DNA of 61,199 nucleotides, filler included, from Platydemus manokwari (lineage: Eukaryota): the NCBI GenBank assembly GCA_037951405.1. It is 5 parts of 5 records of this genome, joined end to end, with 100 filler letters (N's around TTAATTAATTAA, not from the genome) between each part and the next. Parts side by side here need not be neighbours in the genome. Positions count along the whole stretch, not along the records: positions 51,835 to 61,199 come from JBBMOY011259319.1; 4 more parts are not named here. The stretch is one strand, 5' to 3'. The first letter of the stretch is position 1, and each line of letters starts with the position of its first letter. Positions 28,793 to 61,199 of this stretch are shown here, piece by piece. A program made the translations under genes and the position numbers. The notes beneath the pieces are model-generated. The model worked only from the letters and a program-made list of their open reading frames with translations. It was not told the DNA's origin and searched no databases.

Positions 28793-29413
28793 TGTGGGCA
28801 TTTGAAATTGAATTAAAATTTATAAAGATTTATTTCCGTATAAAATTTTTGGTATGAAATCAAATTTATTTCTTTAAATAATTCTATTTATATATAATTT
28901 GATGTCGTGACTTTTCGGTTCGTTTTTCAATGTGTGATTTTTAAAATAGTGGCGGCTTTGATGGCAGCCACGAATCAGGATTCGATTCTGAGAAGATCAA
29001 TGAATGAAAATTATGGAAAAGAAGGAGAAATATGTTGAAATTATATAGAGAATAAATAAAGAAGATGTAGAGAAGATATAGAGAAGATGTAGAGAAGATA
29101 TAAAACAGGTAGAAGAACTAGGTTTTTTATGTAGATATGTGAGCATTCGATACAGAGCCAATTAAGTAAACAAGAAATATCAAAGATTTTAAAGAAAGAG
29201 GGATGTGAGCATTTTAAAATTGAATTAAAATTTTAAAGATTTTATTTTATATAATTTTTTTTATATAAAATCAAATTTATTTCTTTAAATAATTTTATTT
29301 GAATATAATTTGACGTCGTGACTTTTCGGTTCGTTCTTCAATGTGTGATTTTTAAAATAGTGGCGGCTTTGATGGCAGCCACGAATCAGGATTCGATTCT
29401 GAGAAGATCAATG
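28793..29413 (+). mobile_element. Tandem TRIM-like LTR element (LTR-internal-LTR-PBS..., cut by the gap)
   Basis: LTR1 28793-28961 and LTR2 29204-29372 (period 411). PBS-like TGGCAGCCACG follows both LTRs. PPT AAAGAAAGAGGGA at 29191-29203. Confidence 0.85.
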
Positions 29414-31592: not shown

Positions 31593-31756
31593 TGTAAGCC
31601 GCCACTATTTTTAAAACCACACATTAAAAACGAACTGAAAAGTCACGATATCAAATTACATGTTTAAAAACAATTATTTAAACAAAATAATTTTTAATTT
31701 TATACAAAAAAATTTTATGCAGAATTAAATCTTGTAGTCATTTCAAAGTGCTCACA
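31593..31756 (-). mobile_element. Solo LTR of the TRIM-like family
   Basis: The reverse complement reads TGTGAGCAC...AAAATAGTGGCGGCTTACA. Flanks AAGAT / ACGAT form a 5-bp TSD with 1 mismatch. Confidence 0.85.
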
Positions 31757-51834: not shown

Positions 51835-52549
51835 AACCTACCAACGAACGGCAGTGTAGTCTTATTTAATATGATTTTATTGATGAATTTGTTTAGAGAT
51901 TCCCTAGAATATTTTATTTCTACGGTAAAGCTAATTACATCTTCCTTTAGCACACAGAAGTTATCTTTTTGAATTTTAGTGTTAGTTAAGCTTTTTTTTC
52001 ATCATTTACTGAACAGTGATTATTCAATATATGTATGCAAATAATTTTACATAATGATCATACATTTTTCATATTTTCCATTATTGAACCTATTAATTAA
52101 TTTCCTTTTCTCATAATTCAGTCAATTCAAAATTTTCATTTCAATCAGTTTAACTAAAAGACTAACAATAATTTTCACTAATTTATATTTTTCCCCATTA
52201 TACCAATTGGTCAGAAAAAATATTAAGATTTTAAATTTCTAAAAATTTCAAACCGCTAATTAAGAAAACAGTCCTAATATATTTATCAAAAAAGAGTAGT
52301 CAACACAAAATTCATATTTCAGGAAAACTTTAATAGTCAGATAAGATTAATCAAGATACTAATTGTAAAATCGAATTATGTAAGATTTTGGAAACAAATG
52401 AAAAAAATCATTTAGAATCTGATAATTTTTATTAAAAATTTGAATTTCTACAAATATTCTACGTTTTCAATAGACAGAAAATATAATTAAATCTCAATTG
52501 ACTGTTAACATGTAAATATCACAAATACAAAACAATAAACAACCAAAAC

Positions 52550-53062
52550 TGTGAGAGTTTTTAAATGGATTGCATTTTTAAAGATTTAATTCAGATTTGA
52601 TATAAAATTATATTTATTTGTTTGTATAATTATATTTAAATATATAATTTTCTGTCATCATTTTTCAGTTCATTTTCGATGCTTGCTTTATAAAAAAATA
52701 GTAGCGGCTTACATGGTGACCACGCATCTGGATTCGATTCTGAGAAAATCAATGACTAAAAATCATGGAAGAAAAGGATGAAGACATAGAGAAGATATAA
52801 AGGAGATAGAGGATAAATAGAATTTTATGTAGATAAATAAGTTGAGTATTCGATAAGAAGTCAATTAATAATACAAAGAAAATCAAAGACTTCAAAGAAA
52901 GGGTGGTGAGAATTTTTAAATAGATTATTTTTTTAAAGATTTAATTCCGATTTATATAAAATTATATTAATTTATTTATATAATTGTATTTAAATACATA
53001 ATTTGGTGTCATGATTTTTCAGCCCGTTTTCAATGTGCTTTATAAAATAGCAGAGGCTTATA
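52550..53062 (+). mobile_element. Full-length TRIM-like non-autonomous LTR retroelement (513 bp)
   Basis: 5' LTR 52550-52713 (TGTGAG...GCGGCTTACA). PBS TGGTGACCACG at 52714. ~190-bp non-coding interior. PPT AAAGAAAGGG near 52894. 3' LTR ~52905-53062. Perfect 5-bp TSD AAAAC at 52545-52549 and 53063-53067. Confidence 0.9.
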
Positions 53063-56000
53063 AAAACCACGAAAGAAAATTTTTTTTTAAATAAACAAAA
53101 AAATTCAAAAATCTATTAAACAATATATTACATAAATAACACCAACAATAATCTTAACTAAAATTTGTCAGCTAATATCCATCATATTCTTGAAAATATA
53201 CATTTATTAATAAAATCACAATATGAATTATAAATATAAATGTGTCGATAAAAGGTTTCTGCTAATTATTTTCTCTACTATTAATATTCTGCTTTCATCA
53301 ATTTTCCTATCAAATTCATTTGGGTATATAAATTGTGTCATTATATATTAAAAGTATCATTATTTTCTGATACATCAAAAGATTCCGAATTTTCAAACCA
53401 TGCATATTAAAAAGAATGCTTTTCCGTATGAATTGAATAATTAATTCTATTAGGAATTTATTTCAAAAAGTACTTTTATTTTCAAAATCAATTAATCAAT
53501 TGCTATAGCAATTCAATTTCTTGTTCGAAAATGAATTTCTCAATAAATTCAACTTCAATATTTACAAAATAAATTATCATACGTTTAAATATTGATATTA
53601 ATAGTATTGTTATTTTCCGTTATCAATAGTGATTCCTTTACTGTGTATATCACAGCAAAAACTTGTATTATTTATGGATTTTATTTTAGTTGGTTTATAC
53701 TTTAAATGTTTCACTAAATCATTAATTGTTGTTTTGTAAAAGAATTCTTCATAAAAAGAGCTACTGCATTAAATTTTGTTAGAATAATGAAATTCGGTGA
53801 CCAAGGCATGTCGAAAAAATCGTTCAAGAATCAAGATCATGTTAACAGTGTTTAACATTATAAATTCCTTTCGTTGGACCAAAGTGTTAGTAAGGAATAT
53901 TACTTACGTGCTATGTGTCGTTAGTGTAAGGCTAGATTTATGGGCTAGAAACTCTTGATTTTTGTACCACGATAATGCTATTTCAAGTTGTATTGGTTCT
54001 TCGAGACTTTTTCATCCAAAATTCGATTCATTGCGTTCTACAAACCCCGTATTAGCCTGTTATAGCACAGGATTATTTATGCTTATTCAATAATCTCAAA
54101 AATTCATTCCGCTAATATCGTTTTGACTAGATATCGTTTTTGACTAAATTAAGTCAAATCGAAGAAAGTATTGAATGCCATTAAACTTTAACAACTGCTT
54201 CGGAGTGGGATTGAAATTACTTTCAAAGTGATAAAATTGATTTGGAAAAATAAATAAAAAAATTTCATTTTGTTTCAAAGTTCCCAGTTATATTTGATCA
54301 CAATAGTATAAACACTAGAAGGAACACTAATTCCACCCATAACCATGAGACAAAAAGATTTGGAATATGAATATACGAAACTGACTGAGAAGGAACATCA
54401 AAGACTCTCAAGATAAAAGGCACGGGGAAAGAAAGAGATAATTAATTTCGAGGAATAATATTGAACATAGATCAATACTATAGGGGATCAAAATAGGAAT
54501 TAAGAACGGTTAGTGCACTCTAAAATTTATCTGTTGAAGCTAAAGGTAATAAATTAATCATCAAATATGAGAAAAAGAGTGAGTGATGAACTCCATAAAT
54601 GACTGAAAGAGATTTGCTGAAATGAAGTCAGATTGAAGATGATGACAGATTCTCAATGCAAAGTGAAAAGTGATAATAAATTTAAATAAATTGCTTATGA
54701 CTTGAGTAAATGGAATATGAACTTTTGAACTATTATAATACTTATTCGAATTATATGAATATTTTATAACAGAAACTAAAACTTTATTTTGTCAATATTA
54801 AAAAGGGAAAGATAACGAATACCAATATATCAAGTGATATCTCGAATGAAAACAAATCTAAGTAAATGGAAAGGGAATAATACCGAAATTATTCCAAAGT
54901 AGAAAACCTACTAGCTCTACAGGAAAATCTAATATCATCACCAATACTAGATTGCATATACAGTCTCAATCTAGACTATTGAATAAATCGGAGGAAAAAA
55001 TATGACAGGCAAAACCCAGTATGAAAGAGAAGTAAAAAAGTAAAAAGTTAATTAAGAATATATCACGCTGATTATGTGTTATTAGCTACAAATTATAAAT
55101 AACGTGTAGTAAAACTAGAAAAAAAATAATTAAAAGGGCAACTTAGTAATGTAATTAAAATAAAACTATTTTGACGTGATTATATAATCGAATAAAGATT
55201 TATTCATATTGGCGCTAATTACATGTTCAAGGTATAATTTAATATATCGATAATTCATTTGCAAATAGATAGTTATGTTATTTTAATTTTTTTTCGGCAA
55301 ATCTATTTTGAAAATTTTCCAATCGATAATAATTGGATGAATTGTCTATAAATATCCTTAACAGACATTAATTGCTTTTAGGCATTTGTATCTCAGTATG
55401 TATATTTACATCATATTTTCTTACTGTTTCAAGTAATATTTCCAACGGTGCAACTGTTTTAAATGATTAATAATGTTAGATGTTGACTTTTAAAATACAA
55501 TCTTCATTATTGATGGACTTATAAACGTTTCAATACAGCTCTTTCAACGAGTTTCAAATTCTGGTGTCTTCTTCGCCAAAGATTATTCTAAGACTAGCAT
55601 TTTCTGAGAACTTAGTTTGAGTAATCATAGAAAAGAGAACTTTTCTTCCATTTTGCTGAAGCATATCTTTTTCAAATTTTTATAGGAACATAGTTCTTAG
55701 CCACACATATTTGATCATTCCCACATTTTCTCTCACAGTTGTGTGGCTTTACCGCGCAGATGTTGGCAGTGTGAACTCTTTTCATATGAAGGGGCGTCTT
55801 AAAAATTCTATCCCATTTTGAAACCGTATAATTAAGCTTGGGATTTTGTTATTAATTTATTCTTTAAGGGGGAACTTTGAGTTGTGAATACTACTATTAT
55901 TTAAGTTCTTCTATGATATCTATGAAAAATCTATCACTAACTCATTTGAATCATTTGATTATTTTTCTCAAATCTACTCATCATTTGTTTCTCTAAATAA

Positions 56001-56076
56001 TATATATTCATGAAAAATAACAATCAATGATTGTTGTCAATTGCAAGAACATTCATATGCTTGTAAGTTATCGGAT

Positions 56077-56097
56077 ATCTATCTATCTATCTATCTA
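56077..56097 (+). repeat. (TATC)n microsatellite
   Basis: About five TATC units. Confidence 0.8.
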
Positions 56098-59000
56098 CCC
56101 ATACACCCATACAAGTTTGGTACATGAAGTGAAAATTTCTCACCAATTCCTCATACATGATTTTTGATTTTTGAAAACCTATTTTCGAGATCTAATGGAA
56201 TGCACAGAAGGAGTAAAATGATATTGTGAAAGGATTGTTTGATGTATTTGTCGAACTTTAGTAATAAACATCATGTTATTTCTGAATTTTTCGTTGAATA
56301 ATGTAAGTATTTCGGAATTAAATTCTTGAATATCATATAACTTTCTGGATCAGTATGTATCAAATGTGATTTTCTTATTCATACTTATTATGTTTTACAT
56401 CATTTTCATTTTGTATAACTAAATATTTTAGATTCCATCATATGTTTACTTGATATTTTCGTTATTATTTGTCCATCATATTAATCATACAATTTTTCAT
56501 TGTTTTTCACCTCGTAAACAGAGTTGGAGACTCTTTATGTTCAGTTACTGTCTATCTTGCAGATTAGTAAATTCTTAACATGAGTAACTATATTTTAATT
56601 GATTCATAAGTATTACATTTAGTCATATAAATCATTTAAATAGCTTTTAATTTTCGAAATTTTGATTCCGTTAATTTTAAATTCCAATATACATGAAAGA
56701 AAATCGATAAAATTTCTCGGTTGATTTCAAAATTTGTGATAATTTTTAATAGAAATTTGAAATGAAGATTTTACTTTTCAAAATATATTTTCACGTGAAA
56801 ATTATTGTTGAAATTAAATATTATCATTCAATTATATTCTTAGAAAAAAAATTGAGAAAATCTTAGAAAACAAGACCTAAACTGTTATAAATTTATTTCA
56901 AATGAAAAAATATTTATATTTTTCGAATGATTTCAGAAATTTTATGTAACCTTCCGGTAATTTTCTATAATTAATATATCAATATAATTCTAAAAAATAA
57001 ATATTTTCTTTAAGATTTAAATATTTTGAAAAAACAGAAATAGATTCAGAGTTGGAAATAATCCAAAATCTAAATCTGAGTTTCACAATTTTTGATTTCA
57101 TCGATTTGTAAAGTCATAGATATTTATAAATTGTAAAACTGATAAAAACTTTTGACGATTCAATGGTTCTATTCATTAAATATCTATCTATTCATTAAGT
57201 TCTTTCACTTGTATTTTTTTCACCAATTATTTTTCAGGGTTTCATTAATATTTGTTTTCCATTTCATTTTTGCGGAAAATTAAAATCAACTATTATAAAT
57301 TATCATAAAAATTATTGCTAATATTAGCATCTGTCAAAATAAAAACTATAAAGCTTCGATTTAAAGAAGTGATAAAATAATGTTTATCATTTGACGAAAT
57401 ATATTTGCAGCATATCAAAATTGTCAATTGATTCAACTTCATAGATGAGTTTTCTTTTATTTTCTCACACAACAATGATAATTGTCTAATATTCAATAAA
57501 CTATCTCAACATTTCTTGAAAATATAATTGTCCATTTAACAATAAAATTGAATTGTAGCTATTTATTATTCATATAATTGTTATTGAATATTGTAATTGA
57601 AACGTCGGAGTTTAATAAAAATAATTTTATAATTTCTATAAGACCGGAAGGATCAAAATTACGGGAAAGATGATTACATTTCAAAATAAATACCGCTTAT
57701 TGAATATTGTTTAATTTTCAATGACCGGGACTGAATGTTAAAGTTTTTTTGATTTAACAAACCCTGTTTTACTCAAATCATATTCTAGTGTCATTAATGT
57801 TTTGAGATTTAAAATTATTTTCTTTCATTTCAATAATACAACGATAATGATGATATATCTACTAAATTCAGTGTACTAAATCGATAAAAATTTATTAGAA
57901 TCATTTATGTTCGATGAAGTAAATTTTTTCAAATATTTTTTCAATTTTATACAAAGGAAAATCAAACATGACATTTCCTTCTCATCAGAATTATTTACAT
58001 GGTTGATTCTGATAACTTGAATGATAATCATTAATTGATACAAATCAATGTCTCAAAACCAAAATTTGTCATCCAAATTCGAGCTCATTTTCGTAATTTT
58101 TAAACAATTTTTTATAAATAAATTAATTTTTCCGATTTTTATGCAAATAATAAGATTTGTTTCAAAGATTTTAATTATTGAAAATGTAGAATTCACGTAT
58201 TTTAGCGTGGGCTTGATATATTCTTGCGCTTTTTAGATGAATATTCATCGATAACATTGTCTCTTATTTAGAAATTATTCCATAAACCTTGAAATATTCC
58301 CCTTCTATATCAAGTGCCAACAAACTTAGCTACTATTAGTCATACAATTAAATTTTGAACACATTATGATTCATATTAATTAAATCACTACACACAAAGA
58401 GCTCCACAAAATAACAAAAATCTTCATGATTAATTTTTTACCAATAAAGCAAGATATTTTGTTATTTAATTACTCGTCCAAATCTATAGTTATTATTTGA
58501 CACTATTCATACACCAATAAACATAAATTTTATTTATATATTATATATTTTTTGGATATTTTGAAATCAAACAATAATTTTATTGATTTTCTGTCCTTTA
58601 TCTTGAAATCCTTTTACATAAAACTTTCATTTGAATAATTTTTAAAAAATACAAACCATTGTAAATATCTAAATTATTTTATCATTTAAAATTGGAAATA
58701 ATCTCCAAAATCATTGTTTTTTTCATTTTTTTTAGAAAATAAATAAAATATCATAATGGAATTCAAGTTATTAAGACAGTTCAAACAACATATTGAAATA
58801 GCGTCAAAATATCCTTGTATTCTAAAAACATTAACTTGATCTTTTACTTTTAAATTTTCAAAATAGATTTAATTATAACTGTGAGTTGCCAAAATTTCTT
58901 CATTCTTAATATTCAAATCAAAAGTCATGTTTACAATAAAACAAAAAATCTAGTCGTCAATATATCAATTTTCAAACAAATTTTAAATAGCAAAATTTAC

Positions 59001-61199
59001 CTCCATTTTATTTGTCTTCATTTTTAATTTAAATATAAAAATGCCCATATTTTATATTATTTTTTTAAAGGATTAAATTTTAATACTTTTAAAACTGATA
59101 GTTTAGCAAAATTTTTAAGCAAGATTAATATGCTATCTTAAATTTTAATATAATTTTTTAAAAATATCTTTTGGTTCAATTGTTAATAATTTTAATCATA
59201 TAAAAATTTTAATTATTTATCGTATTTGTAAATAAATCCTAGAATAACATCAAAATAAATAAAATTACTTTCTAGATTTTTATGAAAATTGAAGATTTTA
59301 AATTACATTTTTTTCAAGTAAAAGTTGAATTATGCATTTCGATTATTTCATTCAATTATGTTTCTAAATATACACATATACTTTCATATCCAGTAACTAA
59401 TCCAGAATTCTATATATTCCATTCGCAAAAAAATTCTTATTATGAAGAATGATTGAATAAAAATAACAAATTTGATCAAATGATCTAATAATACAAAATA
59501 ATTTTTAATCTTGATTCATAATTTTATTTTCTTGTTGCAATTTCAAAACTTACAGCCACACTTGTAAAATTGATTTATTTATTAAAAACAATCTTTTTTA
59601 AATAAAATTAATAAGTGATAAAGCAAAGATATTTCATCAGATTATCCCAACCAATCAATTTCAAAATAATTGACAGAAAATCAATACAATTTCGAAATTG
59701 ATTTCAAGATATCAAATTAGTTCAGATGAACTGGTAAAGTGAAATATTAGTACATTAAATTTTTAGAGAAACTTAAATCAAAAGTACTGTGAAATCCAGA
59801 ACTGATTCTAACCTTGATAATAACAATTGTTGAATTTATATAATTTTTATCAAAATTACTAATATAAATATCATTTCATTCTGGTACTATTCAAATATAA
59901 TTTCGTTGGCTTTTTTCCATCATTTTATAGTAAATTTAGTATGTTTATATTTGTTATCTATTTTACTTACTTCAATATATTATATTCAATAATAAAATAA
60001 TTAAAAAGATAATTAATATTCTTATTAAATGATTTATTCAATATCAGATCCAAACAATATCGATTTTATTATTGCTCATGAAATTCTATTACAATTCAAA
60101 CAAATAAACAATTAATTAAATTTAAAAAAAAAATAAAAATAACTACCTTTAAATCCCCAGCTTCAATGTTGCTTCCAACCAGAGTTGACATTGAACTGGC
60201 TCTTTTCATACTAGAAAAAATAATTTCCTTAGTCGAACAAGATTGAGGAAGTTAATATTGTTTACTGATAAATAATAATCAAATCATGTATTATAATCAA
60301 ATCAGTACCATACATTACTACAAATATTCTTTAGAATATCAATTTAACATAAATGTTATAAAATATATGATTGTAACTTAAATGATGTTGAAGCTCATAT
60401 TTAATTATTCGGTAATTCTACTCCTAAATTCATTCTGAGTACTTAGATTAATTGCAGATAGGGATAAATGTCATATGTGACAATAGCAACAAAAGGCCAA
60501 TACCAACCAGTTTCATTATGAATTAGATTAATTATATAATTCTCATAATATTCATAAATTAGAATAATCAGATAACATGCTCAATATAGGAATTTTCTAT
60601 TCATATCATAAAGATACTTTATTAATGTTGAGCGATATCAGAAATTTTTAAATGAACTAAACTGCTACGATCTGTGAAAGAAATAAATCAAAATAATAAT
60701 CAGGATATAGAAATCGAATGATATCGAAAATTTAAAAATTGCCAGTTTTCAATGTAATGACTATAAAATATACAGGCCTAGTTCAGTTTAGACATTTATC
60801 TGTGACGAATAAAATGAAATTTATATTGAATTTATAATATTAAAGATAATAAATTTTCCTTTAAGTATTTTCTATCGAAATCTGTATCGGCTTTTAATCT
60901 TTTTCCAAACAATAACTGCTAAATAAAATATGATATTCCTGTAAGTTTTAATAAGAAATTGTTCAAAATAATACCACTATTTTTAAAATAATACAAAATT
61001 AAAGTAAAACTAACTTCTGCCTAAAAAAACAATTGAAATTAAATTTATAAGACACTTTCAATAAAAATGTTCAGTTTCTAATTTATTAATAAAATCAAAT
61101 ATTTAGTAATTTAATCCTACTCCTTGTATTGGGTGTATAACCTTAAAATTTCGATTTGATAAAAGATGTCGCTGGGAGTATTGCTTGCATATAATGTCG

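What the first reader, a model, noticed from the sequence alone, without database searches (positions are those of the whole stretch)
52550..53062. A ~0.5-kb TRIM-like LTR retroelement family seen in three forms
Seen in sequence: two ~160-bp direct repeats with TG..CA-type ends (short inverted termini TGTGAGC/GCTTACA in the best copy), a TGG-starting PBS right after the 5' LTR, a purine tract before the 3' LTR, no coding capacity, and a perfect 5-bp TSD (AAAAC). Related copies occur on two other contigs: a tandem array at 28793 and a solo LTR at 31593. Established: this is the TRIM architecture, mostly known from plants, with a few animal cases such as the ta-TRIM of taeniid tapeworms. Inference: three loci in 61 kb imply a high-copy family mobilised in trans, possibly undescribed in this host.
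Basis: partly seen in the sequence, partly recalled or inferred. Interest (0 to 1): 0.78.

Follow-up and report, generated by a model that had tools for sequence, protein, structure and literature searches.

The report
Decayed miniature LTR retrotransposon (TRIM-like)
This is one old, inactive copy of a tiny protein-less LTR retrotransposon in a very AT-rich eukaryotic genome, a kind of element already known from plants and several animal groups, so it is real but fairly ordinary.

Summary
The structure at 52550-53062 is real. Two direct repeats (164 and about 159 bp, 86% identical, blastn E 4e-46) flank a 190-bp non-coding interior. The 5' repeat starts TG and ends CA. A GC-rich, tRNA-type primer binding site (TGGTGACCACG) follows it directly. 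A 10-nt purine run abuts the 3' repeat. AAAAC flanks both ends. The repeat does not extend into either flank, and the orientation is unambiguous. This fits a TRIM-type non-autonomous LTR retrotransposon far better than a plain duplication.

The copy is old and dead. LTR divergence is K2P 0.16 with four indels, and both termini of the 3' LTR are mutated.

The family claims could not be tested: three loci, a tandem array, a solo LTR, high copy number and mobilisation in trans. The other two loci lie outside my piece. The 9.4-kb piece holds no second copy and no RT or integrase. The public collections on hand gave only chance matches. The host stayed unidentified.

The element is not a ta-TRIM: its sizes, PBS and TSD length all differ. 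Its LTRs carry no tRNA-like or 5S-like sequence, so it is not Cassandra, Helenus or Ajax. TRIMs are now documented in many animal phyla, so I rate this a new member of a known kind, of low to moderate interest.

The parts
52545..52549 (+). left target-site duplication AAAAC
   Evidence: Read directly. Identical to 53063-53067. Chance of a 5-mer flank identity at fixed boundaries in this piece is 0.0038.
52550..52713 (+). 5' LTR / terminal direct repeat, 164 bp, TG...CA
   Evidence: 86% identical to the 3' copy, E 4e-46. Starts TGTGAGAG and ends GGCTTACA.
52714..52725 (+). primer binding site TGGTGACCACG(C), tRNA 3'-end type (closest to Trp type)
   Evidence: Starts the base after the LTR's CA. 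It is 8/12 G+C in a 23% G+C background. It matches 10 of the first 11 nt of the tRNA-Trp PBS tggtgaccccgacgtgat listed in Table 2 of PMC4635179. The cognate host tRNA was not available.
52714..52903 (+). 190-bp non-coding interior
   Evidence: No ORF of 50 aa or more. No Pfam hit. No Rfam hit. Fold z-score 0.83. No protein relatives for its longest open frame.
52894..52903 (+). polypurine tract AAAGAAAGGG abutting the 3' LTR
   Evidence: It is one of only 12 purine runs of 10 nt or more in 9365 nt.
52904..53062 (+). 3' LTR, 158-159 bp, termini mutated (T+GG... / ...TA)
   Evidence: Ungapped register puts G52905 opposite T52550. The end GGCTTATA stands against GGCTTACA in the 5' copy.
53063..53067 (+). 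right target-site duplication AAAAC

Best explanation
[quoted passage not shown] Shown: the cis-parts and their exact juxtaposition, namely LTRs, a PBS directly after the 5' LTR, a PPT directly before the 3' LTR, a 5-bp TSD and no coding capacity. Inferred from the established LTR-retrotransposon cycle: an RNA starting and ending inside the LTRs was packaged by Gag of an autonomous element. It was reverse-transcribed from a host tRNA annealed to the PBS; by the PBS sequence this was most likely tRNA-Trp-like, with an Arg-type acceptor as the alternative. Plus-strand synthesis was primed at the PPT. An integrase that recognises the TG..CA ends and makes a 5-bp staggered cut inserted the cDNA. 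A 5-bp TSD is the length typical of Copia-type partners and is unlike the 4 bp of the Gypsy-mobilised animal TRIMs described so far. Since insertion the two LTRs have diverged by about 16%, and the 3' LTR has lost both terminal dinucleotides, so this copy can no longer transpose.
For: LTR pair: E 4e-46; 136/158 identical, K2P 0.156. Exact boundaries and motifs. Each accessory feature is individually rare in this piece: TSD 0.0038, TGG 0.0047 per position, purine runs of 10 nt or more 12 in 9365 nt. The PBS is 67% G+C in 23% G+C DNA and matches 10/11 of the tRNA-Trp PBS core printed in PMC4635179 Table 2. The repeat stops sharply at the LTR ends. Interior edges against outer flanks are not above chance, P 0.09-0.44. 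This argues against a longer tandem array. Orientation is unique, because the opposite strand offers no TGG/PBS next to an LTR. No coding capacity or structured RNA. The dimensions fit the published TRIM definition: under 1000 bp, TDRs of 100-250 bp, PBS and PPT (PMC6934838; PMC10886601).
Against: Only one copy could be examined, so 'family' and 'mobilised in trans' rest on analogy. The cognate tRNA was not identified, because the piece has no tRNA gene and no host tRNA set was on hand. Beyond about 12 nt the PBS does not look like a canonical tRNA T-arm. The 3' LTR lacks TG..CA. With +-2 nt of boundary slack the TSD alone has a 7% chance level. The hexamer ACCACG occurs both in the PBS and in the right flank, at 53066-53071. 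This is a small oddity that I read as coincidence.
Confidence: 0.8

Rival explanations
1. A one-off internal deletion of an ordinary autonomous LTR retrotransposon, not a member of a dedicated miniature family. Recombination or a template jump removed gag-pol and left only the PBS-proximal and PPT-proximal stubs.
For: Only one copy is visible. No external relatives could be retrieved to show a shared short interior.
Against: The 164-bp LTRs are short, in the 100-250 bp range given for TRIM terminal repeats. The 190-bp interior shows no trace of gag or pol in any frame.
Confidence: 0.12
2. A local segmental or tandem duplication: about 1.45 units of a 354-bp repeat, or the edge of a satellite array. 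On this reading the PBS, PPT and TSD resemblances are fortuitous.
For: The geometry repeat-spacer-repeat is also what 1.45 tandem units look like. The DNA is AT-rich and low in complexity, which inflates short matches.
Against: The similarity ends exactly at TG and CA and does not continue into the flanks. A 67% G+C tRNA-type PBS, a purine run and a 5-bp flank identity all sit at the predicted bases. Their joint chance is roughly 1e-5 or less even before the PBS sequence is counted. TRF reports no array here.
Confidence: 0.05
3. A Pol III-driven TRIM (the TRIMp3 type: Cassandra, Helenus, Ajax) whose LTRs carry a small-RNA-derived promoter.
For: A TTCGA-containing, T-loop-like string (GGATTCGATTC) lies 16 nt into the interior.
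Against: ARAGORN finds no tRNA-like sequence. Rfam at E up to 5 finds no tRNA or 5S match anywhere in the element. The T-loop-like string is in the interior, not in the LTRs, whereas the defining small-RNA sequence of these groups lies in the LTR.
Confidence: 0.02

Closest known systems
Plant TRIMs (original definition; e.g. Katydid, Wukong)
   Same: Total size about 0.5 kb. Terminal direct repeats of 100-250 bp. A short non-coding interior that begins with a PBS and ends with a PPT. A 5-bp TSD (PMC6934838; PMC3532108).
   Different: Plant TRIMs have a PBS complementary to tRNA-Met; here it is Trp/Arg-like. The host is a 23% G+C genome, taken for animal from a by-eye mariner remnant. Sequence similarity could not be tested.
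PbTRIM of ants (Pogonomyrmex barbatus and other ants)
   Same: Nearly the same dimensions: 480-781 bp, LTRs of 152-184 bp. The PBS lies directly after the 5' LTR and there is a PPT. It inserts in AT-rich DNA.
   Different: PbTRIM makes 4-bp TSDs, mostly ATAT, and uses a roughly 15-nt tRNA-Leu PBS. Here the TSD is 5 bp (AAAAC) and the PBS is different. Sequence comparison was not possible.
ta-TRIM of taeniid cestodes (Echinococcus, Taenia)
   Same: Non-autonomous TG..CA LTR element with PBS, PPT and TSD. Solo LTRs and tandem forms are reported for that family.
   Different: ta-TRIM has LTRs of about 198 bp and an interior of about 590 bp. Its PBS has 9 nt complementary to tRNA-Leu and sits 4 nt from the LTR. 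Its PPT sits 3 nt from the LTR, and its TSDs are mostly 4 bp. Its interior starts T-TGGTGGCAGCGG (probe primer), against TGGTGACCACGC here. ta-TRIMs were not found outside taeniids.
Helenus / Ajax / Cassandra (TRIMp3, Kojima 2024)
   Same: Short non-autonomous LTR elements with PBS and PPT, found in many animal phyla. Ajax and fungal or plant Helenus make 5-bp TSDs. Some hymenopteran Helenus use tRNA-Trp or tRNA-Arg primers.
   Different: Their LTRs contain a tRNA- or 5S-derived Pol III promoter. None is detectable here. Animal Helenus make 4-bp TSDs.
biv-TRIM of bivalves
   Same: An animal TRIM with canonical, solo-TDR and tandem forms.
   Different: biv-TRIM lacks a recognisable conventional PBS. 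This element has a clear one.

Membership tests
TRIM (structural class of non-autonomous LTR retrotransposons) | Total length under 1000 bp with two terminal direct repeats of about 100-250 bp | tested here: met
   513 bp in all. Repeats of 164 and 158-159 bp, 86% identical. Definition from PMC6934838.
TRIM (structural class of non-autonomous LTR retrotransposons) | Interior starts with a PBS complementary to a tRNA | tested here: inconclusive
   TGGTGACCACG(C) lies directly after the LTR's CA. It matches 10/11 of a published tRNA-Trp PBS core. The host tRNA set was not available and the piece has no tRNA gene.
TRIM (structural class of non-autonomous LTR retrotransposons) | Interior ends with a polypurine tract | tested here: met
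   AAAGAAAGGG at 52894-52903 abuts the 3' LTR.
TRIM (structural class of non-autonomous LTR retrotransposons) | No coding capacity for gag or pol | tested here: met
   The longest start-to-stop ORF in the element is 48 aa. No Pfam hit.
TRIM (structural class of non-autonomous LTR retrotransposons) | Target-site duplication flanking the element | tested here: met
   AAAAC / AAAAC. Chance is 0.0038 at fixed boundaries.
TRIM (structural class of non-autonomous LTR retrotransposons) | Multi-copy family sharing the short interior, with copies at different sites | not testable with these tools
   The host genome was not available. There is no second copy in the piece. Scans of prokaryotic, viral and metagenome collections gave only chance hits.
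ta-TRIM (taeniid cestodes) | About 198-bp LTRs, about 590-bp interior, tRNA-Leu PBS 4 nt from the LTR, mostly 4-bp TSD | tested here: not met
   Here the LTRs are 164 bp and the interior 190 bp. The PBS is TGGTGACCACG at 0 nt from the LTR, against TGGTGGCAG... in ta-TRIM. The TSD is 5 bp.
PbTRIM (ants) | 4-bp TSD (ATAT preference) and a roughly 15-nt tRNA-Leu PBS | tested here: not met
   The TSD is 5 bp, AAAAC. The PBS differs from the tRNA-Leu-type PBS read from the ta-TRIM primer. The PbTRIM sequence itself was not on hand.
TRIMp3: Cassandra / Helenus / Ajax | tRNA- or 5S rRNA-derived sequence (Pol III promoter) inside the LTRs | tested here: not met
   ARAGORN finds 0 genes. Rfam cmscan at E up to 5 gives no tRNA or 5S hit in the element.

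The most novel reading that the evidence does not exclude
The copy is a relic of an undescribed animal TRIM family. It combines a tRNA-Trp-type PBS with 5-bp TSDs, which points to a partner whose integrase makes a 5-bp cut (Copia-type being the typical case), not the Gypsy partners with 4-bp TSDs inferred for the animal TRIMs described so far.
Probability: 0.3. Interest if true: 0.35.

Novelty: new member of a known kind. Interest (0 to 1): 0.22.

Why it matters
Miniature LTR elements are easily missed by automated repeat annotation. They can seed solo-LTR promoters, tandem arrays and fusion transcripts, as shown for ta-TRIMs in Echinococcus stem cells. Cataloguing such a family would improve repeat masking and gene models in this AT-rich genome. 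It would also add a data point on which autonomous lineages mobilise TRIMs in animals. This single decayed copy carries no functional implication by itself.

Tried and rejected
1. More copies within the piece. Blastn with word size 7 of each LTR and the interior against the masked piece gave only AT-rich noise of 60 nt or less.
2. Metagenome-contig scan with the LTR-end+PBS 19-mer. It gave two hits, both inside GC-rich bacterial coding DNA, so chance.
3. Genome-contig scan with the 18-mer conserved in both LTRs. It gave 120+ AT-rich bacterial hits, and none extends beyond 53 nt.
4. Three viral-contig scans: zero hits.
5. Host identification by exact look-up of eight ATG ORFs of the piece: none is in the collection.
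6. Finding other copies through spurious ORFs. The search for homologous proteins with the 63-codon open frame of the interior (minus strand) gave nothing.
8. Full-text searches for the PBS string returned only unrelated PCR primers. The string is absent from the Helenus supplements.
9. Rfam, ARAGORN, Pfam and an RNA fold of the interior gave nothing.
10. Test of whether the repeat continues into the flanks, which would indicate a tandem array: not above chance.
11. The mariner-like remnant next door was not supported by Pfam or PDB phmmer on its two open pieces.
12. One literature search was badly framed and uninformative.

Full report
Scope. It is 9365 bases with no N, about 23% G+C throughout. 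It has no ORF longer than 67 aa and no tRNA gene.

The observation. The repeat finder and MAFFT show two direct repeats about 354 bp apart. Read against the ruler, the 5' copy is 52550-52713: 164 bp, TGTGAGAG...GGCTTACA. The 3' copy is 52904/5-53062: 158-159 bp, (T)GGTGAGAA...GGCTTATA. Blastn gives 135/161 identities, E 4e-46. Counting on the MAFFT alignment gives 136/158 identical, 14 transitions, 8 transversions and 4 indel events, K2P 0.156.

The base after the 5' repeat's CA begins TGGTGACCACGC. The 10-nt purine run AAAGAAAGGG (52894-52903) abuts the 3' repeat. AAAAC lies immediately outside both ends, at 52545-52549 and 53063-53067. The finding's coordinates, 52550-53062, are exactly right.

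Is it more than chance? Rates were measured in this piece:
- Identical 5-mers flanking arbitrary intervals occur at 0.0038, or 0.068 if each boundary may slide by 2 nt.
- TGG occurs at 0.0047 per position.
- Purine runs of 10 nt or more occur 12 times in 9365 nt.
- The PBS 12-mer is 67% G+C in 23% G+C DNA.

All of these coincide at the predicted bases of a significant direct repeat, so this is not a chance pattern. I also asked whether the repeat is the visible part of a longer tandem array. Local alignments of the interior's start against the right flank, and of its end against the left flank, are no better than random windows of the piece, P 0.09-0.44. TRF calls no array here. The similarity therefore stops sharply at TG and CA. 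Only the + strand gives a PBS after one repeat and a purine tract before the other, so the orientation is unique.

What it is not:
- The element has no ORF of 50 aa or more. Its open frames have no Pfam match, and its longest open frame has no relatives in the large protein collection.
- The 190-nt interior folds no better than shuffled sequence, z 0.83.
- Rfam at E up to 5 finds no tRNA, 5S rRNA or ribozyme in the element, and ARAGORN finds nothing. This excludes the Pol III-promoter TRIMs (Cassandra, Helenus, Ajax), whose defining small-RNA sequence lies in the LTR.

The primer binding site. ta-TRIM's interior starts TGGTGGCAGCGG (probe primer in PMC4558846), which is a tRNA-Leu site. The sequence here differs at four of the next seven positions after TGGTG. 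Among the retroviral PBS types tabulated in PMC4635179, the tRNA-Trp site tggtgaccccgacgtgat matches 10 of the first 11 bases here. From memory, an Arg(TCG)-type acceptor stem would also fit except for the discriminator base. That is a lead, not a test.

Beyond about 12 nt the sequence does not fit a canonical T-arm. I therefore read an 11-12-nt PBS for a Trp-like tRNA whose acceptor differs by one pair from the vertebrate one. No host tRNA set was available, so this membership criterion stays inconclusive.

Mechanism. The cis-parts and their spacing are shown. The rest is inferred from the established LTR-retrotransposon cycle summarised in PMC4558846 and PMC10886601:
- Transcription runs from within the 5' LTR to within the 3' LTR.
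- The RNA is packaged by Gag of an autonomous element.
- Minus-strand synthesis is primed by a tRNA at the PBS, followed by strand transfer through R.
- Plus-strand synthesis is primed at the PPT.
- An integrase acting on the TG..CA ends inserts the cDNA at a 5-bp staggered cut.

Described animal TRIMs with Gypsy partners make 4-bp TSDs, while Copia-associated ones make 5 bp. The 5-bp TSD therefore hints weakly at a Copia-type partner. No partner is present in the piece: no RT, RNase H or integrase signal was found in any open frame tested.

State of this copy. LTRs are identical at insertion, so K2P 0.156 plus four indels marks an old insertion. It would be roughly 5-80 million years old over the range of substitution rates tried, but the host's rate is unknown. 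The 3' LTR has lost both terminal dinucleotides: TG has become GG, or has gained an inserted G, and CA has become TA. The copy is a fossil.

What could not be established. The family-level claims need the host genome: three forms, high copy number, mobilisation in trans, and being undescribed. I tried every indirect route available:
- a sensitive blastn inside the piece;
- exact-pattern scans of the metagenome, prokaryote-genome and viral collections;
- an exact look-up of eight ORFs to identify the host;
- a protein-word search with the interior's open frame, to catch spurious ORFs on other copies.

All were blank or chance hits. The host remains unidentified. It is a very AT-rich eukaryote, probably an animal, judging by a mariner-like relic seen by eye.

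Comparison with known kinds. The dimensions and parts fit the published TRIM definition: under 1 kb, 100-250-bp terminal repeats, PBS and PPT. They also fit the 5-bp TSD of plant TRIMs. PbTRIM of ants is the closest in size but has 4-bp ATAT TSDs and a tRNA-Leu PBS. ta-TRIM is larger, Leu-primed with offset PBS and PPT, makes 4-bp TSDs and is restricted to taeniids, so this element is not a ta-TRIM. biv-TRIM lacks a conventional PBS.

[quoted passage not shown] A further animal TRIM family is therefore expected rather than surprising.

Verdict. The TRIM-type reading is the best explanation, at confidence about 0.8. The main rival is a one-off internally deleted LTR element (0.12), and a plain duplication is unlikely (0.05). 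Novelty: a new member of a known kind. Interest is low to moderate, 0.22.

Noticed in passing
window 53780-54110 (+), frames shifting: By eye this is a degenerate mariner-like transposase relic (..KIMLTVF....FLYHDNA....P.LA....LF..) with stops and frameshifts. Pfam and phmmer against PDB on its two open pieces found nothing, so it remains an unverified lead.
   Followed up: partly
window 56680-56735 (+), 59657-59712 (+), 58576-58632 (-): Three copies of a roughly 55-60-nt motif with an internal palindrome (GAAAATCAAT...ATTGATTTC) lie within 3 kb. This may be a short interspersed or MITE-like repeat.
   Followed up: partly
window 56076-56113: A (TATC)5.5 microsatellite is followed directly by ACCCATAC x2.
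   Followed up: no
window 60130-60195 (-): A short open frame, MKRASSMSTLVGSNIEAGDLK, ends at a GT (AAG|GTAGTT). It is possibly the first exon of a host gene on the minus strand, but is too short to search.
   Followed up: no
window 52719-52724 and 53066-53071: The G+C-rich hexamer ACCACG occurs both inside the PBS and in the right flank, overlapping the end of the TSD. Alignment tests give no support for homology beyond it, so I read it as coincidence.
   Followed up: yes
window 54300-55050 (+): A purine-rich stretch (GC skew +0.25, AT skew +0.25) holds several A/G runs and has a slightly higher G+C than its surroundings. It has no ORF or Pfam signal.
   Followed up: no
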